The translations under genes were made by a program, and so were the position numbers. Shown in pieces: positions 6,561 to 58,729 of a DNA stretch of 64,000 nucleotides (within the stretch, counting starts at the first letter, position 1; each line of letters opens with the position of its first letter). The notes under the pieces were generated by a model. That model ran no database searches, was not told the DNA's origin, and saw only the letters and a program-made list of their open reading frames with translations. The stretch lies in the NCBI RefSeq assembly GCF_006345805.1, contig NC_043003.1:51956001-52020000 (forward strand). Direction: 5' to 3'. The stretch is from Octopus sinensis. Its lineage: Eukaryota.

Positions 6561-6736
6561 TAGGCGTAGGAGTGGCTGTGTGGTAAGTAGCTTGCTTACC
6601 AACCACATGGTTCCGGGTTCAGTCCCACTGCGTGGCACTTTGGACAAGTGTCTTCTACTATAGCCTCGGGTCGACCAAAGCCTTGTGAATGGATTTGGTA
6701 GACGGAAACTGAAAGAAGCCTGTCGTATATATATAT

Positions 6737-6790
<54 letters not shown>

Positions 6791-7030
6791 ATATGTATGT
6801 ATGTATGTGTGTGTATATGTTTGTGTGTCTGTATTTGTCCCCCCAACATCGCTTGACAACCGATGCTGGTGTGTTTACGTCCCCGTAACTTAGCGGTTCG
6901 ACAAAAGAAGTCAATAGAATAAGTACTAGACTTACAAAGAATACATCCTGGGGTCGATTTGCTCGACTAAAAGGCGGTGCCCCAGCATGGCCAAAGTCAA
7001 ATGACTGAAACAAGTAAATGAGTAAAAGAG
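6561..7030 (+). mobile_element. SINE family B, full length with internal (TA)/(TG) microsatellite
   Basis: tRNA-like head TAGGCGTAGGAGTGGCTGTGTGGTAAG...GGTTCAGTCCC; tail GACTGAAACAAGTAAATGAGTAAAAGAG. Confidence 0.9.
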
Positions 7031-7165
7031 TATACGAAGAATAGTTAACTTCATATCCATTAGCTTCAGACTCACTGTACGTAGCATTTCATTTCTTGAG
7101 AAGAATTTCAGTTAACGTTAATGACTTTTTTCTTCATTATAGGCAAAATTTCCATTGATTAAACG

Positions 7166-7363
7166 TAGGCGCAAGCAATGCTGTATGGTTAAGAGGTTTG
7201 CTTCCCAACCATGTGGTCTTGGGTTCAGTTCCACTACACACCACCTTTGGAAAGTCTCTTCTACTAAAGCCCCGGACTGGCCAAAGCTTTGTGAGTGCAT
7301 TTGGTAAACGGAAACTGAAAGAAAGCCGTCGCATGTGTGTGTGTGTATGTGTGCGTTCGCACG

Positions 7364-7419
<56 letters not shown>

Positions 7420-7560
7420 CGTGCGTGTGCGTGTGTGTGTGTGAATGAATGTATGCATGTATGTATGTATGCATGTCTGAGTGTCTTTTTGTTGTTTGTC
7501 TAAAACCTTCAAGGCGGTGCTCCAGCATAGCCGCACTCTAATGACGGAAACAAGTAAAAT
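7166..7560 (+). mobile_element. SINE family B with internal deletion
   Basis: Same head and tail as 6561-7030; middle segment missing. Confidence 0.85.
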
Positions 7561-7799
7561 ATATAAATGTTTAAAGATCTTCTCAGTCATTCTCAAGTAT
7601 GTTAGGGACTGGTAAATCTAAGCTTTACTGACGAAATTAAATTAGACTGAAACATGTACATATTAAAGATCAGATTCCTATCCACAGCATGGCTTTAGCT
7701 TTTGATTTTGGACTCATCTTCTTTGACTCTCATGACAGAATAATAGTCAAGTTAGCCGAATCTTCGCTCTGTGAGTGTTGTCATCTGTGAGTGTTGACT

Positions 7800-19564: not shown

Positions 19565-19890
19565 GTAGGCATGGTTGTGTATAAAGAAGTTTGCTTTTCA
19601 ACCACATGGTTCCGGGTTCAGTATCACTGCGTGGCACCTCAGGCAAATGTTTTCTACTGTATCCCCAGAAACCCGTGATGTGTGTGTGTGTATTTGTCCG
19701 CAACGCTACTTTACAACCAGTGCTGGTTTGTTTGCGTTCCCGTAACTTAGCAGTTCGGCAAATAGGACCAATAGAATAAGTACTAGACTTTACAAATGTA
19801 TATGGGTCTTTTGCCCGACTAAACTTTTTAAGTCAGTGCCCCAGTATGGCTGCAATCCAATGGCTGAAACAAGTAAAATGATAAAAGAAA
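19565..19890 (+). mobile_element. SINE family B with internal deletion
   Basis: Head AACCACATGGTTCCGGGTTCAG and tail GGCTGAAACAAGTAAAA. Confidence 0.85.
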
Positions 19891-30534: not shown

Positions 30535-30870
30535 ATACATACATACATGTCGTGCATACATACGTTCAAGCACACATACATACATACGTGCATACATATG
30601 TACATGCATACATATATACATACATACGTGCATACATACGTAATGCATACATATATACATGCATACATGCATGTATACACACTTGCATACATACATACAT
30701 GCATGCATACATACATACATACATACATACGTGCATACATACGTTCATGCATACCTATATAATACATACGTGCATAGATACGTACATGCATACATACATA
30801 CATGCATGTATACATACATACATGCATGCATACATACATGCATGCAAGAATACATGCATATATGCACATA
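30535..30870. repeat. Degenerate (CATA)/(CATG) array
   Basis: Direct reading. Confidence 0.9.
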
Positions 30871-31389
30871 TGGATACAAGGTGCTGGAGGCCAAATTGTG
30901 ACTAATACTTATTAAGCGAGTAAAACCACTTCCTAAATTCCGTAAACACGTGCAAGCGTTCCAAAAGTCCAAGAAGATCCTGTGGATGAATTTGTATTGA
31001 GTGGAAAAGTGCTGCACAGCACTGACCTCACTTTTCGGCACAATCACCTATAACAATGGCATAAGAAAGTTTTAAACAACCAGAAATCAACTAAGCATCA
31101 GTTTTTTTTCATGAGTTTACTTTGTCTTAGAAGGAATTTCTTAATGAGAATTAAGGGTTCTCTCCCTTCACCCTCAGTGCTTCATATGCTAATTAACCCA
31201 TATATGGGACCCTAACAAGTGCTACTATCCCAGGTCAGAGTAAACCTGGGAAAAGTAGTGGTTAAGCGGTGGTTCCACACTCCTCAAAAACCTGGAACTC
31301 CTGTATCAGAGCCACTCTGCCGGATGCAGTTTAAAGTTGTACCCAAGACATACATACATTTACATGTGTGTGTATGTGTGTGTGTGTGA

Positions 31390-38396: not shown

Positions 38397-39050
38397 CTAT
38401 ACACTTTCAAAAATGGTAGACGAAAACCTATGGCTGCACAAAGAGATCACCTCAGTAAATTTATTTAAAGTTTTTGACCCCAAAGACTTAAGGATGGCAA
38501 GGGATTCCCTTACCCATAACTTACACTTATTGATATTTATTCTGAAGTAAGGGGCCCTCGAAATAACGGATCATTCAAGAGAATATCTTTTCTTATTCCT
38601 CTTTAAACCGTGTATATAAGAAGCAAGTGTAGTAGAATTGCAGTATTTTTCGTTCGAAAACGAATTCATATGGGCCATATACCTAACTTTAAAATTTACC
38701 GTACTGCCTATATAAAATTTATCTAAATTACCCTCCTCTTTAACAACGCATTTATATATTGCATTAGCTAATGAGACAGAACCCATCAATGGGGCATAAC
38801 CCAGGGTTTCTACAATTACATGATTTGCCAGAGCCATCCCTAACCTTATTGTTACTACCAGCATTATTCACCTGGCCTCCCACATTCTTTCTTTCACCTA
38901 TCTCATTACTGGGGTTTGGTACGACCGGTGGGAGCGATAAATCTGCCATCAAAATTCTCTTACTCAGTAATGCCAAATTTTGCCTCCTTTATTGCATCTA
39001 TTAATAGAAACAAGTTAAGTGGGCAAGGGCATTGAATGTGTTTTTCTACT
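38397..39050 (-). mobile_element. Penelope-like element, GIY-YIG endonuclease C-terminal region (decayed)
   Basis: KSCNCRNPGLCPIDGFCL (Cys motif), IYKCVV...KFYIGSTVNFKVRYMAHMNSFSNEKYCNSTTLASY, then *SVISRAPY...CKLWVRESLAIL...LNKFTEVISLCSH; one frameshift and stops. Confidence 0.85.
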
Positions 39051-43558: not shown

Positions 43559-44039
43559 CAGATTACTTCTTCCCTGGTCCTTGGCGTCATCTCTCCTCCA
43601 ATTTTATCTAAGGACAAACTGCGATTTTCTTCTTTTGGTTTTGGTGTGCAACCGATATTGCCTGCCGTATTAGCTCATCCAAACTATATAAGAGAGATTT
43701 TCTCCTTTTTTTTAAAATTTCCAACTTGTTAGTAATGTTACACTTAAAAGCACATAATTTTGACAATACCAGATCCCTTTAGCATTCACTTTCTCCGAGC
43801 AGTTTCTTATATTTCTTAGTTCCAATTCAACAGCAAATGCGAAGAAATAGGATATATCATGATGCTTATTTCTAATACTTACCAATTGACCGTGAAATAT
43901 TTGTTAATGAACCACATGATCACTGACGCGTGTTATGCTACTTAAAGGTTTCTCTCACGTCCGTAATATCAGAAAGACAAAAGGTCTGAAGCTGTGTGTG
44001 TCAGAGCACAGGAAACTGCGTCATAAGCATTTGTTTTCA

Positions 44040-44574
44040 TACATATGTGACTGTGTGTTAGGAAGTCTGTTTACTAACCACATGATTCTGGTTCCAGTCC
44101 CACTCCGTTGAACCTTGGGCAAGTGCTTTCTGCTATAGTCCAGGGCCGGCCAAAACCTTGTGAGTGGAGTGGAATTATGGATGGAGACTGAAAGAAACCC
44201 GTCGTATATGCGGCGTGCTCCTGTAATCCAGCTACTCGGAAGCCTGGTTGGCTGGTTGGCCGGTTTGAGGACGGGAGTCCTGGTAGTCAGCCTTCTATGG
44301 CGATCGGGTGTCCGATGCTAAGCTCGGTATCAGTATGGTGCAGGAGAGGGAACTCGTCAGGATCAGGTTGTCTAGAGAGGATCGATTCGGTCCAGGGTGG
44401 AAACACAGCAGGTAAAAGAACCAAGGTTGAGCAGTAGTGGGATCATGCCTGTGAATAGTTGTCGGCTGGCAGCCTGTTCGATACAACTGAACACCAATCT
44501 TCTTTTCTTTAAGGCGGTGCCCTAGCACGGCCAGTCATACGACTGAAACATGTAAAAGAATAAGAGAATAAAAG
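44040..44574 (+). mobile_element. SINE family B head (to ~44207) and tail (from ~44508) flanking a 7SL copy
   Basis: Head ...CCTTGGGCAAGTG...GACTGAAAGAAACCCGTCGTATAT; tail TTTAAGGCGGTGCCCTAGCACGGCC...GACTGAAACATGTAAAAGA. Confidence 0.85.
44210..44506 (+). ncRNA. 7SL: 7SL (SRP) RNA copy, near full length, 5' ~10 nt missing; gene or retrocopy
   Basis: Colinear with metazoan 7SL: CCTGTAATCCAGCTACTCGG (Alu domain), CTATGGCGATCGGGTGTCCG, CAGGGTG GAAA CACAGCAGG (helix 8), CAGTAGTGGGATC.TGCCTGTGAATAG, ends TCTTTT. Confidence 0.93.
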
Positions 44575-44739
44575 TACACACACACACACACGCACACACA
44601 CACACACATACATACATACACACACACATACATATACACATATGTATATGCATATCCTTTACTTGTTTCAGTCATTATCTATATCTATATTTTTGTCAAA
44701 TTACATTGGCAATACATCATTTCCACATCAAATATATGT

Positions 44740-46394: not shown

Positions 46395-46994
46395 ACAAAT
46401 ACATATATACATACATACATACATACATACATGCATGCATGCATGAATACATACATACATACATACATACATGCATGCATGCATACATACATACATACAT
46501 ACATACATACATGCATACATATATACATACATACGTACATATATAATACATACATACATATGTATGTATTATTTATAGCCTATCTGCTTCAAGATCCAAC
46601 GTTTCAAGAAAAGAATTATTTCATGTTCTCTTGGATTTTTTAGATTCTGACATCATCATCACCAACAACGCATACACGCTTTTAGTAATGCCTGCACTAA
46701 TGTGTGTGCCTGCGTGTGTCCATAGGTGAGTGTCCATGTGTGTGCGTATATGTTCATGTGTGTGTATGTGTGTTCATGTACGTTTGTGTCCATGTGTGTC
46801 CGTGTGTGTGTGTGTATGTATGTGTGTATGTGTGTGTGTCCATGTGTGTGTGTGCCCATGTGTGTGTGCCTGTGTGTGTCCATATGTGAGTGTCAATGTG
46901 TGTGTGTGTGTATGTGTCCATGTGTGTCCATGTATGTGTCCATGTGTGTGTATGTGTGTTCATATATGTTTGTGTCCATGTGTGTCCATGTGTT

Positions 46995-47040
<46 letters not shown>
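46395..47040. repeat. (CATA)n array plus (GTGTCCAT)-type complex minisatellite
   Basis: Direct reading. Confidence 0.9.
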
Positions 47041-47897
47041 TGTAGTTGTATTATTTTTCTGTAAATACGTGTAAATCCTTGGGCATTTGCCTGCTTCGAG
47101 CAAAGGCGGTACCGTAACCAATGGACTAAATGTGAGGCGTGTTCATTGCAAGTTGAAAACTATATATTTGTCTGCGTCTCGGTATTCTTTTTTCCATCAT
47201 TCCCAAGGCGCCTATTATTAAAAGGATTATTTCTGTTTTCATGCTTACATTCTACATAACTTTATTTCCATTATACCATCGTCCTGTATCTAGACTGCTC
47301 CATGTCTTTAAAAATAATTGTGGTAGAAGGCTGTATGTAAAGAATATTTTACAAGTTGTAGATAATAAAAAAAACAAAAAACGTTTCATTATTTCTTAAT
47401 GAAACGTACAAAGCGTTATTCATTGAGATTAGAATTAATAAGGGGCAATCTATAACTTTTTTGGAGCTAGTTATTGCTCTCCGCGTGCTGGAAATTTGTA
47501 AATGTTTTCGACTTTTAAGACAAGCAAAGAATACAAAAATACATGTGTGATAACTTTAACATCAAGCATAATTAAATCTCAGAATGAGATTGAAACAGTA
47601 ATCGCTCGATAATGTAAAGTATAGAAGCCATCTTATCATGGCTAACCACATTGGGGAGGGGGTGTTACTGTAGCTTTATAGCCCCAAGAGATCTTCGTCT
47701 CTAGCTGGCTTTAGACACAATATCTGTGTCCTTGGAGTATTTGCAAAGGGAGGCCATCCCTTCCTCAACATCTTTTTAAATATTCTGTCCTCTATCTTTC
47801 ACTTGTTCCAGTCTTTTGTCTGTCGCCATATTGGGACATAGCCTTGATGGGTTTAGTCGAACAAATCGACCTATCAACAAGAGGCAATTTATATATA

Positions 47898-48897
47898 CGG
47901 TAACACCTCACTTTACGAGGACACGCTTTACGAGATTCCGGGTTTAGGAGTTTTATTTTTCAAGCACAAGATCCAAATTTTAAACGAAGTGCAAAAGTTT
48001 CTACTAAAATAACAAATGCCTTCTGCGTCTTACTGAGAAATTTATAGAGAGCAAAAAAAAAAAAAAAAAAAAAACGCTTCTTTTAAGCAAACATCTTTAG
48101 ACTTGTTTTTTTAAAACAAATCAACAAGGCGTAGGAGTGGCGTGTGGTAAGTTAGCTGTAGCTTGCTTACAACCACATGATTCGGGTTCAATCCCACTGC
48201 GTGGCACCTTGGGCAAGTGTCTTCTACTATAGCCTCGGGCGACCAAAGCCTTGTGAGTGGATTTGGTAGACGGAAAACTGAAGAAGCCCGTCGTATTATA
48301 TGTATATATATATATATGTATGTGTGGGTGTGTGTGTGTGTGTGTATATGTTGGTGCGTCTGTGTTTGTCCCCCAGCATCGCTTGACAACCGATTCTCGT
48401 GTGTTTAGGTCTCCGTAACTTAGCGGTTCGGCAAAGTGACCGATAGAATAAGTACTAGGCTTACAAAGAATAAGGCCTGGGGTCGATTTGCTCGACTAGA
48501 GGTGGTGCTGCAGCATGGTCACAGTGAAATGACTGAAACAAGTAAAAGAGTAAAAGTGTAAGTCCGTCTACGAGTGCTTGTGAATCTAGGATCGCGTCTA
48601 CAAGTGATGGTGTGCGCGAGTCAAGTGCGAGTGAAAGTGATTCAGAAAACGATTATAATAATAATATAAATGATCTTGACATTCTTTTTACTTTACATAA
48701 AATATTCTTTACATTCTACTGTTGTTTTGTTGCCATTTATTTAAGATTATTATAAATTTTAGAGGTAAAATATTTTTCTGGGAGCAAATTACAATTTATA
48801 ACATTGCTACTATGGGAAATTATTGCTCTGCTTTACGAGTTTTCGCTTTACGAGCGGTTTCCGGGAACAAATTATCTCCTGTATCGAAGTATTACGG
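47898..48897. mobile_element. Probable Tc1/pogo-type MITE with an inserted SINE
   Basis: TA|CGGTAACACCTCACTTTACGAGG ... CTCCTGTATCGAAGTATTACGG|TA, weak TIRs, internal repeated CTTTACGAG at both ends. Confidence 0.5.
48127..48557 (+). mobile_element. SINE family B, full length
   Basis: Head, internal microsatellite and GAAACAAGTAAAAGAGTAAAAG tail. Confidence 0.9.
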
Positions 48898-49838: not shown

Positions 49839-50610
49839 TGTTGTGGTGAGAGTCATTGACACCCCTGGCGGACTGGAGAATGGACTAGCCGAACTCTTAT
49901 AGAAAGTAGAGGCTGGTAGTAGTCGGGGGAGAACGTTTTTGGTAGTCTCGCGAGGTATGTCATGTGAACACATTGATTAAATCTCCGCTACCTAATTTAT
50001 CTACACCAGGATATAAAAGTGGCGACGAGATATTCGAAGCTTGCGTCGGACGTTTAAATTTTTTTTTTTTTTTTTGGTGCGAAACCAAAGAAAAAATGAT
50101 TTAACATGGAAGACTTGTTGGCTCGCATGGTGCAGTTGCAACAGCAACAACAACAGCAACAACAGCAACAACAGCAAATACAAAAACAACTACAACAGCA
50201 ACAACAACGATACCAACAGTTACTAGATGTAATGTTGAAGAAGTCTGAAAATACTTCAGGTTCATTCTCGTCAGACAGCGTAACAAATTCAAATGGAAAA
50301 TTTATTTATAACCCAGAAGAAGGTACTACTTTTTCTTCATATTTTAGAAAATACGAAGAAATCCTCAGAGAAAGATGTAAAAATTTGAATGACGAAAAGA
50401 AGGTGCAACTACTTTTAAGAAAGTTATCCCCAGCCGAACACGAAAAGTATTGCAGCCCCTGTTCAATACACGTTGGCAATGTTTAAATTTAGTTAAAAAG
50501 AGATGAAGATTTCGTCGCCTATGCTGGGGTCGTTGATAGAGAGTGTGAAAATTCAAATTAAATGAATTAACCCAGTTTTGTTCAAATGTCTGAAAAGATG
50601 CTGATATACG
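49839..50610 (+). mobile_element. Ty3/Gypsy LTR retrotransposon relic: putative LTR, PBS and truncated gag
   Basis: TGTTGTGG start, PBS-like TGGCGACGAG at 50020; ORF 50106-50486 FIYNPEEGTTFSSYFRKYEEIL...DEKKVQLLLRKLSPAEHEKY, then EDFVAYAGVVDRECE. LTR limits tentative. Confidence 0.75.
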
Positions 50611-56347: not shown

Positions 56348-56748
56348 CTCTCTTTTACTCTTTTATTTGTTTCAGTCATTTAACTGTGGCTATACTGGAG
56401 CACTGCCTTTAATCGAGCAAATCGACCCCAAGACTTATTCTTTGTAAGTCTAGTACTTATTCTATCGGTGTCTTTTGCCGAACCGCTAAGATACGGGGAC
56501 GTAAACACACCAGCATCGGTTGTCAAGCGATGTTGGGAGGACAAACACAGACACACAAACACACACATATATATATACATATATACGACGGTCTTCTTTC
56601 AGTTTCCGTCTACCAAATCCACTCACAAAGCTTTGGTCGGTCCGAGGCTATAGTAGAAGACACTTGCCGAAGGTGCCACGCAGTTGGACTCAACCCGGAA
56701 CCATGTGGTTGGTAAGCAAGCTACTTACCACACAGCCATTCCTGCGCC
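56348..56748 (-). mobile_element. SINE family B, full length
   Basis: Reverse complement of head, core and tail. Confidence 0.9.
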
Positions 56749-56773: not shown

Positions 56774-57113
56774 TGCGTGGCACCTTGGGCAAGTGTCTTC
56801 TACTATAATCTCGGGCCGACCAAAGCCTTGTGAGTGGATTTGGTAGACGGAAACTGAAAGAAGCCCGTTGTATATATGTATATATATGTGTGTGTTTCTG
56901 TGTCTGTGTTTGTCTCTCCAACATCGTTTGACAAGTGATGCTGGTGTGTTTACGTCCCCGTTACATAGCGGTTCAGCAAAAGAGACCGATAGAATATGTA
57001 CTAGGCTTACAAAGAATAGGTACTAGGCTTACAAAGTCCTGGTGTCGATTTGCTCAGCTAAAAGGCGGTGCTCCAGCATGGCTACAGCCAAATGACTGAA
57101 ACAAGTAAAAGAG
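56774..57113 (+). mobile_element. SINE family B, 5'-truncated
   Basis: Starts at TGCGTGGCACCTTGGGCAAG; ends GAAACAAGTAAAAGAG; local duplication of TACTAGGCTTACAAAG. Confidence 0.9.
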
Positions 57114-57384
57114 TATATTGTATATTGTTTATTTATTTCATATTTGTATGTTCACTTTCTGTCACATTTGGTCCCTTGTTCGTGGGAGTGATATTATCGT
57201 TAAAGGCGCGAAATTGCCGAGATACTTTGGCCGATAATTGATGAGGATTTGACGACCTTATGTGTCTGTCTTCCGTTTGTTTGTGCTTATATTATGCTTT
57301 TTAACTTATTATTTAACGGAAGGGTATACAGTGTCTCTTATTTTGTTTATGATAGTGAATATATATATATATATATATATAAAA

Positions 57385-57768
57385 TACTTGTTTCAGTCAA
57401 TAGACTGCTGCCATGCTGGGGCACCGCCTTCAAGAACCTTTTGGTCGATCGAATCGACCTCAATTTATTGTTTCCAAAGCCTGATACTTATGTACTTATT
57501 CTGTTGGGTACTTTGCTGAACCGCTAAGTTAGCGGTTACGTAACACACAAACGCGGGTACGTAAACACACCAACACCGGCTGTCAGGCGATAGGGGTGGA
57601 CAAACACACGCGCGTGCGCATATGGGGTGCCTCTTTCAGTTTCCCCACTACCAAATCCACACACAAAGCTTAGGTCGGTCCGAGGCTATAGCAGAAGACA
57701 CTTGCCCAAGGAAACATAGTGGGACTGAACCTAGAACCATGTTGATGAAAAGCAAGCTTCTTACTGCA
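57385..57768 (-). mobile_element. SINE family B
   Basis: CTTGTTTCAGTC tail, GAACCGCTAAGTT core, GGGACTGAACC head. Confidence 0.85.
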
Positions 57769-57802: not shown

Positions 57803-58418
57803 CACACTTGTGGCATATATGTATGCTTACACACAATCATATTCCTAATAGGTGTGTGTGGTATGTATGTATGTATGTATGTATGTATGTATGTATGTAT
57901 GTATGTGTATGTATGTATGTATATATGTTTGTATGATTGTGCGTGTGTGCACATGTGTCTATGAACGTGAGTGTATGCGTCCATATGCCACGGCCGTCGT
58001 CAATACAACGTCAATACAGTTTGTAAAGCAATTATTTCTGAAAAACAAAGCAAGACAAAACAAAACAAAACAAAACAAAACAAAAAAAAAAGAAAACTCA
58101 CCAAAAATGCACAGCTTTATGTCAACATAGGAGGGATGGTTATAGGAGAGTCAGTGTGTTGGGGGTGAGGAGAAGTGGTCGGTGTAGGGGTGGGGGAGAA
58201 AGATTCAGAGGGGAGGGAAATAGGTGTCTGGGAGGGTTAGGAAAAGAGGTGGAGATTTGGGGAAGATGAGAAATATGCGTAAGCGCGCGCACGTACACAT
58301 ATATAGGTGTACACACACGCACTTATGTGTGTGTGCTTGTGTGTATGAGTGTATGTGTACATGCACCTTTGTCTATCTGCCTGTATGTAGTTATTTCTAC
58401 ACACACACACGCACGCAC

Positions 58419-58457
<39 letters not shown>

Positions 58458-58729
58458 TGGTTTGATATATGTATATGCATGTTTATGCTTATACGTGAAG
58501 TTGTATGTGTATATAAGCAGGTATGTACATGCGCATATACGTAGTATGTATGTATGCATGTATGTATGTATACTTGTACATATATTGTTGATATCTACAT
58601 TTGTATATTGTAAATATGTCTGCAAATATGCAATAATATATGTGTGTGTATATATATATATATATGTACATGTAGAGGTAGGTACGTACATATATGTTTA
58701 TATATATGCATATGTTCTATTTTATTAAC

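What the first reader, a model, noticed from the sequence alone, without database searches (positions are those of the whole stretch)
44040..44574. 7SL RNA sandwiched between the head and tail of a tRNA-derived SINE
Seen: a near-complete 7SL (44210-44506) starts right after the point where family-B SINEs normally enter their microsatellite, and is followed directly by the SINE 3' tail in the same orientation. The SINE's middle ~150 bp is absent. Helix 8 (GTG-GAAA-CAC) and the long-range pairing GTAGTCAGCC/GGCTGGCAGC are retained. Established: 7SL-derived and tRNA/7SL composite SINEs are best known from Euarchontoglires and hagfish. Inference: either a one-off double template switch or insertion with target deletion, or a member of a composite tRNA-7SL SINE family in a mollusc. 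The upstream SINE head could supply Pol III A/B boxes.
Basis: partly seen in the sequence, partly recalled or inferred. Interest (0 to 1): 0.75.

Follow-up and report, generated by a model that had tools for sequence, protein, structure and literature searches.

The report
7SL RNA pseudogene inside a SINE
A dead, reverse-transcribed copy of the signal-recognition-particle RNA (7SL) replaces the middle of an old tRNA-derived SINE; it is most likely a single accident of retrotransposition, not a new family of mobile elements, though the family test could not be run here.

Summary
Rfam places a metazoan SRP (7SL) RNA at 44210-44502 (154 bits, threshold 70). It is flanked in the same orientation by the head (44047-44209) and tail (44511-44576) of a tRNA-derived SINE that has at least 8 other copies in the window. 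The 7SL replaces the SINE's internal microsatellite and its ~190-bp body.

The copy is not a working SRP RNA gene:
- It lacks the first ~10 nt.
- It has 12 more broken base pairs than a bona fide 7SL, which scores 256 bits.

It ends at the natural RNA 3' end (T4 run at 44503-44506), so it was made from RNA. That T4 run is a Pol III stop signal ahead of the SINE tail. Normal SINE copies have none, so the element should not be able to propagate.

The 7SL part looks about 5-8% decayed, while the SINE flanks differ at ~22-26% of otherwise invariant sites. I therefore favour a later 7SL cDNA insertion into an old SINE with target deletion (~0.4) over a single double-template-switch event (~0.3). 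A composite tRNA-7SL SINE family (~0.13) is not excluded, because no collection I could reach holds this genome. Taking both one-off routes together, a one-off event is about 0.7-0.75 likely. Interest is modest.

The parts
44038..44046 (+). Candidate left target-site duplication CATACATAT, directly 5' of the SINE head (weak)
   Evidence: A 9-nt exact match to 44627-44635. Both copies lie in CATA/CA low-complexity sequence, so this may be chance.
44047..44209 (+). SINE head. It is 5'-truncated by ~9 nt and contains a tRNA-like part (A-box-like TGACTGTGTGT at 44048-44058, B-box-like GGTTCCAGTCC at 44090-44100), a CORE-like motif CCTTGGGCAAGTG (44113-44125), and the last bases before the family's microsatellite (...CGTCGTATAT).
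   Evidence: blastn to 8 other window copies; alignment A1. It differs at 19 of 73 columns where all other copies agree.
44210..44506 (+). 7SL (SRP RNA) retrocopy. It lacks about the first 10 nt, keeps both the Alu-domain remainder and the S domain, and ends in the Pol III terminator T-run (44503-44506).
   Evidence: Rfam RF00017, 154 bits. Comparison with a bona fide 7SL at 256 bits. This is the only T>=4 run in the element.
44505..44510 (+). 3' junction overlap TTCTTT. These bases could belong either to the 7SL oligo-U end or to the old-subfamily SINE sequence ...GGTTCTTGAAGGCGG (5-nt microhomology).
   Evidence: Alignment A2 with copy 57480r. The blastn tail match to that copy starts at 44505.
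44511..44576 (+). SINE tail (AAGGCGGTGCC...GACTGAAACATGTAAAAGA ATAAGAGA ATAAAAGTA), ending in about three degenerate octamer repeats
   Evidence: blastn E=2e-12 to copy 6971-7032; alignment A2.
44577..44654 (.). (CA)n/(CATA)n microsatellite following the element. It contains the candidate right target-site duplication at 44627-44635.
44655..44676 (-). A 22-nt fragment of the SINE tail in inverted orientation (TTTACTTGTTTCAGTCATT...)
   Evidence: blastn at 91-95% identity to tail positions of three reference copies.

Best explanation
This is an isolated, non-functional 7SL retropseudogene lodged inside an older copy of a CORE-type tRNA-derived SINE.

Proposed sequence of events:
1. An old SINE copy, 5'-truncated, already sat at this locus.
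2. Later, a cDNA of a 7SL transcript joined into it in the same orientation. The cDNA was complete at its 3' oligo-U end and stopped about 10 nt short of the 5' end.
3. At the right-hand side, priming or joining used the TTCTT microhomology just upstream of the SINE tail block.
4. At the left-hand side, joining fell at the first repeats of the fragile (TA)n microsatellite.
5. The microsatellite and ~190-bp body in between were lost. This is a target-site deletion, or DNA-break repair that captured the cDNA.

The product cannot act as SRP RNA, because half of the Alu-domain hairpin is missing. It cannot spread as a SINE, because Pol III would stop at the 7SL T4 run before the tail.

Shown: the anatomy, the RNA-level 3' end, the truncation, the terminator and the unequal decay.
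Inferred: the order of events and the joining mechanism.
For: (1) Anatomy.

(2) RNA-mediated origin: the 7SL part ends exactly at its terminator T-run. Compare L001, where the gene ends ...CTCTAATTTTTTTT.

(3) Unequal decay:
- The SINE head differs at 19/73 (26%, CI 17-38%) of columns invariant in all other copies, and the tail at 7/32. Old copies show 15-22% and young copies 2-5%.
- The 7SL has only 12 window-only broken pairs out of ~98, against 4 in the bona fide L001. That implies about 5-8% substitution.
- P(<=12 broken pairs) is 1e-4 if divergence were 20% and 0.009 if it were 15%.
- A relative-rate count gives 38/197 window-specific changes against 27/186 L001-specific changes.
- The 7SL shows no excess CpG decay. 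The head has lost 3 of 7 consensus CpGs to TG/CA (read).

(4) No direct repeats flank the 7SL itself, there is no A-tail, and there is a 5-nt microhomology at the 3' junction.

(5) Another copy (7165-7560) also lacks the body next to an expanded microsatellite, so this region of the SINE is rearrangement-prone.
Against: - Both breakpoints sit at module boundaries of the SINE (start of the microsatellite, start of the conserved tail block). Under a random deletion that is something of a coincidence.
- The 'old flanks' argument fails if head and tail came from a SINE subfamily not otherwise sampled in this 64-kb window. Their private differences would then be source differences, not decay.
- The SINE tail ends in octamer repeats, which suggests (inference only) a partner LINE that starts only on its own tail. 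That would make direct priming on 7SL RNA unusual.
- The bona fide 7SL of this species was not available, so the 7SL age is indirect.
Confidence: 0.42

Rival explanations
1. A single-event tripartite chimeric retrocopy. A LINE reverse transcriptase started on the tail of a SINE RNA. It jumped to the 3' end of a 7SL RNA and copied it to about nt 11. It then jumped to a SINE head RNA, possibly a processed head fragment ending at the (UA)n tract, and the whole cDNA was inserted at once.
For: - All three parts lie in the same orientation and are colinear with the SINE.
- The 7SL is complete at its RNA 3' end and the tail is 5'-truncated, as in known template-switch chimeras.
- There is a TTCTT microhomology at the first jump.
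- Both junctions lie at module boundaries.
- There is a possible 9-bp target-site duplication around the whole element.
- Double template jumps are documented in a fungus and in mammals (PMC2104539).
- If the partner LINE initiates only on its own tail, template switching is the expected route for any 7SL retrocopy (inference).
Against: - The parts should be the same age, but the SINE flanks look about 3-4 times more diverged than the 7SL. This model then needs a divergent SINE source not seen among the five young copies in the window.
- The candidate target-site duplication is low-complexity and lies 50 nt beyond the tail.
- Two jumps are rarer than one event.
Confidence: 0.3
2. A member of an unrecognised composite SINE family (tRNA/CORE head, then 7SL, then LINE-type tail) that amplified in this lineage. 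The 'private' differences in the head and tail would then be the family's own consensus.
For: - The modular head-body-tail layout matches how SINE families swap modules.
- Hagfish SINE1-1_EBu arose as a chimera of 7SL and an older tRNA SINE (PMC7245038).
- The mismatch between diverged flanks and a fresher 7SL would be explained.
- Meeting such an element in one 64-kb window is more likely if copies are numerous.
Against: - Only one of ~11 SINE copies in the window carries 7SL.
- The T4 run at 44503-44506 lies upstream of the tail, while five ordinary copies have no T4 anywhere.
- The 7SL is nearly full length with its S domain and lacks the 5' strand of helix 3. The Alu-domain fold thought to help 7SL SINEs therefore cannot form.
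- In this copy the A box has three mismatches to the consensus A box TRGCNNAGTGG, against one for the family consensus.
- The literature searches that combined 7SL and SINE terms with octopus or mollusc turned up no 7SL-containing SINE in molluscs.
- Copy number could not be tested.
Confidence: 0.13
3. The bona fide SRP RNA gene of the organism, flanked by SINE fragments by chance.
For: It scores above the Rfam threshold, and the helix 8 GGAA-type motifs and the terminator are present.
Against: - It lacks about the first 10 nt, including helix 2 and the 5' strand of helix 3.
- It scores 154 bits against 256 for a real gene.
- It has 12 extra broken pairs, three of them in helix 6.
- The sequence immediately upstream is SINE rather than a promoter region.
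Confidence: 0.01
4. A DNA-level artefact or rearrangement: a misassembly, or ectopic recombination joining a 7SL gene and SINE fragments.
For: None directly. The region is rich in microsatellites, which are prone to assembly and recombination errors.
Against: The right boundary coincides with the RNA 3' end of 7SL, not with arbitrary gene-flank DNA. Both junctions are clean and colinear.
Confidence: 0.05

Closest known systems
Chimeric retrogenes made by LINE reverse-transcriptase template switching, including tripartite ones (Gogvadze et al. 2007, PMC2104539; 7SL/LINE-1 chimeras in bioRxiv 10.1101/2025.02.02.635956)
   Same: A small Pol III RNA is copied through to its natural 3' end and fused in sense orientation to a 5'-truncated retroelement 3' part. 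A third segment lies at the 5' side.
   Different: The same SINE supplies both outer parts in colinear order. The host appears to be an invertebrate with a non-L1-type tail. The parts do not look equally old, and the target-site duplication is not convincing.
7SL retropseudogenes and tailless retropseudogenes; LINE-mediated insertions with target-site deletion
   Same: A 5'-truncated, decayed 7SL copy with no A-tail and no flanking repeats of its own, joined through short microhomology, with host DNA lost at the site.
   Different: It landed inside a SINE in the same orientation, with breakpoints at the SINE's module borders, so it mimics a composite element.
7SL-derived and composite tRNA/7SL SINEs (Alu, B1, tree-shrew Tu types, GarnAlu, hagfish SINE1-1_EBu; PMC7245038)
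   Same: 7SL sequence combined with tRNA-SINE modules and a LINE-type tail.
   Different: In those families the 7SL part is a processed Alu domain at the 5' head, without the S domain or terminator, and copies are numerous. Here the 7SL is internal, nearly full length, carries its terminator, lacks part of the Alu domain, and only one copy is seen.
CORE-SINEs of octopus (OR1/OR2, Ohshima and Okada 1994, as cited in PMC4758252 and PMC4824008)
   Same: The host SINE has a tRNA-like head followed by a CCTTGGGCAAGT motif that resembles the CORE domain. That resemblance is from my own recollection of the MIR/CORE consensus and was not tool-tested.
   Different: Identity with OR1/OR2 was not checked, because no reference sequence was available.

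Membership tests
Metazoan SRP RNA (Rfam RF00017), functional gene | Covariance-model score at or above the gathering threshold | tested here: met
   154.1 bits against 70.
Metazoan SRP RNA (Rfam RF00017), functional gene | Complete Alu domain (helices 2-4, with 5' end intact) | tested here: not met
   Model positions 4-13 are deleted. The copy starts at about nt 11 relative to L001.
Metazoan SRP RNA (Rfam RF00017), functional gene | Base pairing preserved as in bona fide genes | tested here: not met
   12 window-only non-canonical pairs against 4 in L001, three of them in helix 6. Score is 154 bits against 256.
7SL-derived SINE (SINE1) / composite tRNA-7SL SINE | Many dispersed copies sharing the same junctions, each with its own flanks | not testable with these tools
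   There is one copy in the window. The DNA collections hold no host DNA: even the abundant SINE head gives 0 hits. The protein collection gives no candidates for the consensus SINE ORF.
7SL-derived SINE (SINE1) / composite tRNA-7SL SINE | 7SL part is a processed Alu domain able to fold, with the S domain removed | tested here: not met
   The S domain (helices 6 and 8) is present and the 5' strand of helix 3 is absent.
7SL-derived SINE (SINE1) / composite tRNA-7SL SINE | The whole unit, including the 3' tail, can be transcribed by Pol III (no internal T4) | tested here: not met
   TTTT at 44503-44506 lies before the tail. Five ordinary copies have no T4.
Template-switch chimeric retrogene (bi/tripartite) | Parts in the same orientation; the 5'-lying RNA is copied to its natural 3' end; the 3' part is a 5'-truncated retroelement | tested here: met
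Template-switch chimeric retrogene (bi/tripartite) | Target-site duplication flanking the whole chimera | tested here: inconclusive
   The only candidate is CATACATAT at 44038-44046 and 44627-44635, within low-complexity sequence and 50 nt beyond the tail.
Template-switch chimeric retrogene (bi/tripartite) | All parts of the same age | tested here: inconclusive
   Flanks show ~22-26% private differences against ~5-8% inferred for the 7SL. The flanks' true source consensus and the species' true 7SL are unknown.
Retropseudogene insertion with target-site deletion into a pre-existing SINE | No A-tail, no direct repeats around the insert, microhomology at a junction, host sequence missing | tested here: met
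Retropseudogene insertion with target-site deletion into a pre-existing SINE | A pre-insertion allele or orthologue with the intact SINE | not testable with these tools
   No related genome could be reached.
tRNA-derived (CORE-type) SINE, host element | Repeated dispersed copies with a tRNA-like head (A and B boxes) and a shared tail | tested here: met
   At least 8 copies in the window. ARAGORN calls no tRNA, so the tRNA-like reading rests on box motifs read by eye.

The most novel reading that the evidence does not exclude
The element is one copy of a so-far undescribed composite SINE family in a cephalopod, in which a near-full-length 7SL RNA replaced the body between a tRNA/CORE head and a LINE-type tail. 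That would be the first 7SL-containing SINE in a protostome and a third independent recruitment of 7SL by SINEs.
Probability: 0.13. Interest if true: 0.75.

Novelty: new member of a known kind. Interest (0 to 1): 0.3.

Why it matters
If it is a one-off, it is a clear invertebrate example of how reverse transcription of a cellular Pol III RNA can swap a module inside a SINE. That is the step thought to create new SINE families such as hagfish SINE1. This example stalled: the captured 7SL brought its own terminator and lacks a foldable Alu domain.

It also serves as a caution for annotation. The locus passes the Rfam SRP threshold but is not an SRP RNA gene.

It would be a notable finding only if other copies share the junctions, because 7SL-containing SINEs are so far known only from Euarchontoglires and hagfish, with a putative marsupial case (PMC7245038).

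Tried and rejected
(1) Looking for other copies through translated junction ORFs.
- The 3'-junction ORF found only P0001, an antisense ORF over a bona fide 7SL gene from marine metagenomes.
- The 5'-junction ORF found no word-sharing candidates.
- In the representative library the 5'-junction ORF found only antisense ORFs of tandem 7SL arrays from other organisms, two SINE-head ORFs from Logan runs, and chance repeat proteins. None spanned the junction.
- The control with the consensus SINE ORF gave no candidates. The protein collection therefore does not cover this genome's repeats, and these negatives say nothing about copy number.

(2) DNA pattern scans for head-then-7SL adjacency in metagenome and genome contigs, and for the SINE head itself in metagenome, genome and viral contigs, all returned 0 hits. 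These collections hold no host DNA.

(3) Exact look-ups of three window ORFs, intended to reach the same locus in other assemblies, were not on record.

(4) A literature search for SINE sequence strings found 0 papers. The searches for 7SL SINEs in octopus or mollusc found nothing relevant.

(5) Bipartite 7SL-tail chimera inserted into an old SINE microsatellite: rejected. No body or tail of the old SINE lies downstream in + orientation.

(6) The target-site duplication search gave only a low-complexity 9-mer.

(7) The microRNA-model hits across the window at relaxed threshold (mir-297, mir-466, mir-3149 and others) fall far below their family thresholds. The sequence I read at two of them (46926-46996 and 7409-7477) is TG/TA simple repeat, so I treat the whole set as noise.

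Full report
**What is there**

The stretch 44040-44580 was read directly. Rfam's metazoan SRP RNA model matches 44210-44502 on the + strand at 154.1 bits (gathering score 70, E=6.9e-40), spanning model positions 1-299. It is the only 7SL-like sequence in the 64 kb, both by self-BLAST and by a relaxed-threshold Rfam scan.

The sequence to the left (44047-44209) and to the right (44511-44576) belongs to a repeated element with at least eight other copies in the window: 6572-7032 +, 7188-7560 +, 19576-19661 +, 23403-22984 -, 48164-48556 +, 56738-56351 -, 56776-57115 +, 57742-57385 - and 63558-63454 -.

Ordinary copies consist of four modules:
- a ~170-nt head with tRNA-like A/B-box motifs and a CCTTGGGCAAGT motif;
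- an internal (TA)n(TG)n microsatellite;
- a ~190-nt body;
- a ~65-nt tail (AAGGCGGTGC...GACTGAAACAAGTAAAAGAGTAAAAGAGTA).

In the element under study, head homology runs to ...CGTCGTATAT, exactly where the other copies enter the microsatellite. The 7SL follows, and then tail homology resumes. Two corrections apply: the missing middle is the microsatellite plus a ~190-nt body, and the 7SL is not quite complete.

**State of the 7SL copy**

A translated-ORF search happened to retrieve a bona fide 7SL gene from marine metagenomes (L001-L004). That gene scores 256 bits on the same model.

- Aligned to it, the window copy starts at about nt 11 (GCTGGGAGTT|GTGGCGTGCTCC in L001, against ...CGTCGTATAT|GCGGCGTGCTCC here). 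Helix 2 and the 5' strand of helix 3 are gone.
- Of the model's 120 pairs, 36 are non-canonical in the window copy. Eight of these come from the deleted strand. Sixteen are at positions that are also non-canonical in L001, which are natural loops. Twelve are specific to the window copy, against four specific to L001, and three of the twelve are in helix 6.
- The copy is therefore a pseudogene, not the organism's SRP RNA gene.
- Its right end is ...CCAATCTTCTTTT, the counterpart of the L001 gene end plus terminator T-run. The copied segment thus ends where the RNA ends, which points to reverse transcription of a transcript rather than duplication of gene DNA.

**Junctions**

At the 3' junction, the bases TTCTTT (44505-44510) can be read in two ways. 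They could be the 7SL oligo-U end. They could also be the sequence that older SINE copies carry just before the tail block (copy 57480r...GGTTCTTGAAGGCGG). That is a 5-nt microhomology.

At the 5' junction, two and a half TA repeats of the SINE microsatellite remain.

No direct repeats flank the 7SL itself. The only candidate target-site duplication for the whole element is CATACATAT (44038-44046 and 44627-44635). It lies in low-complexity DNA, 50 nt beyond the tail, so I do not rely on it.

No remnant of a SINE body or second tail lies downstream in + orientation.

**Can it work as a SINE?**

The only run of four or more T in the element is the 7SL terminator at 44503-44506. Five ordinary copies have none. 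It is established knowledge that Pol III stops at T4 or longer runs. A transcript driven by the head's internal promoter would therefore end before the tail that the partner LINE must recognise.

The A-box-like motif has three mismatches to the consensus A box TRGCNNAGTGG, against one for the family consensus. The truncated Alu domain cannot adopt the fold that the hagfish study argues is needed for 7SL-SINE propagation.

This copy is dead on arrival as a mobile element.

**Relative ages**

- At alignment columns where all other window copies agree, the head differs at 19/73 (26%) and the tail at 7/32. Clearly old copies show 15-22% and young ones 2-5%. Adding related SINE heads from Logan contigs (L005-L007) did not turn these private states into shared ones.
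- For the 7SL, 12 window-only broken pairs out of ~98 correspond to about 5-8% substitution under a simple model. Twelve or fewer would be expected with P=1e-4 at 20% divergence and P=0.009 at 15%.
- A relative-rate count against the Rfam consensus gives 38/197 window-specific and 27/186 L001-specific changes.
- CpG sites show no excess decay in the 7SL.

The 7SL therefore appears several-fold fresher than its SINE flanks. The caveat is that the flanks' private differences could be inherited from a SINE subfamily not sampled in this window.

**Interpretation**

I rank the explanations as follows.

1. A later 7SL cDNA insertion into an old SINE copy, with loss of the microsatellite and body (about 0.42). 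It explains the unequal decay, the lack of an A-tail and of flanking repeats, and the microhomology.
2. A single-event tripartite chimera by double template switching (about 0.30). It explains the module-precise junctions and has precedents. It would be the expected route if the partner LINE initiates only on its own tail. It does not explain the age difference without an unsampled source SINE.
3. A composite tRNA-7SL SINE family (about 0.13). The terminator, the retained S domain, the truncated Alu domain and the single copy argue against it, but it could not be tested.
4. A functional gene (about 0.01) and a DNA-level artefact (about 0.05) are unlikely.

Taking the first two together, an isolated event has roughly 0.7-0.75 probability.

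**Why the family test could not be run**

- Pattern scans for 'SINE head then 7SL' found nothing in metagenome or genome contigs. Scans for the SINE head itself, which has several copies in this window alone and must be abundant in the source genome, also found nothing in metagenome, genome or viral contigs.
- Junction-spanning ORFs found no chimeric relatives. A consensus SINE ORF also found nothing, so these negatives carry no weight.
- Exact ORF look-ups failed.
- The literature tools returned no report of a 7SL-containing SINE in molluscs. According to PMC7245038, well-defined 7SL-derived SINEs are known from Euarchontoglires and hagfish, with a putative marsupial case.

**Comparison with known systems**

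The element works like a chimeric or nested retropseudogene, not like Alu, B1 or the composite tRNA/7SL SINEs. It fails three defining features of the latter that I could test: a processed Alu-domain head, transcribability through the tail, and a foldable Alu domain.

It meets the structural features of template-switch chimeras. It fails, or at best leaves open, the equal-age expectation.

The host SINE resembles CORE-SINEs, which the literature reports in octopus. That resemblance and the mollusc origin are not tool-verified.

**Verdict**

This is a real and neatly structured locus, most likely a one-off accident and a new example of a known kind. Interest is modest (0.3). It would rise to about 0.75 if genome-wide searches show that both junctions are shared by many copies.

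Noticed in passing
window 47092-47251 (+): A U4 snRNA-like sequence just below the Rfam threshold (42.8 bits against 46, E=2.6e-6). The first ~75 nt align well and the rest is decayed. It is probably a U4 pseudogene 2.6 kb from the 7SL copy, and it follows a long (GT)n tract. Two small-RNA retrocopies in 64 kb suggest that such copies may be common in this genome.
   Followed up: partly
window 44655-44676 (-): A 22-nt fragment of the SINE tail in inverted orientation. It is separated from the chimera's own tail by a (CA)n/(CATA)n microsatellite, giving a tail-to-tail arrangement of unknown origin.
   Followed up: partly
window 7165-7600 (+): A SINE copy with head, a very long (TG)n/(TGCG)n microsatellite and tail, but almost no body, and with an internal T5 run. 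This is a second case of loss of the SINE middle next to the microsatellite.
   Followed up: partly
window 56351-56745 (-) and 56776-57115 (+): Two SINE copies lie head-to-head about 30 bp apart, the second one 5'-truncated. A third, diverged copy follows at 57385-57745 (-).
   Followed up: no
window 50106-50486 (+): An ORF with Pfam DUF7083 (E=3e-13), preceded by a polyglutamine run. It looks like a retroelement gag-like remnant. A weak GIY-YIG hit at 38571-38864 (-) falls below the Pfam cut-off.
   Followed up: partly
window-wide (e.g. 2263-2465, 30589-30875, 46399-46579, 58283-58714): More than 100 relaxed-threshold Rfam hits to microRNA families (mir-297, mir-466, mir-3149, mir-1277 and others), all far below their gathering scores. 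The sequence read at two of them is TG/TA simple repeat. They are best treated as false positives that would pollute automated ncRNA annotation.
   Followed up: yes
L001 769-1066 (-), also L002-L004: An identical, apparently functional 7SL gene (256 bits) recurs in four independent marine metagenome/Logan assemblies, including one from TARA. It is only 70% identical to the window copy but nearly identical over nt 11-36. The source organism is unknown.
   Followed up: no
L005-L007 (Logan runs SRR11869384 and SRR11869390): Short contigs carry SINE heads ~77% identical to the window's SINE consensus, each followed by a TA-rich tract. They come from a related SINE in an unidentified sample.
   Followed up: partly
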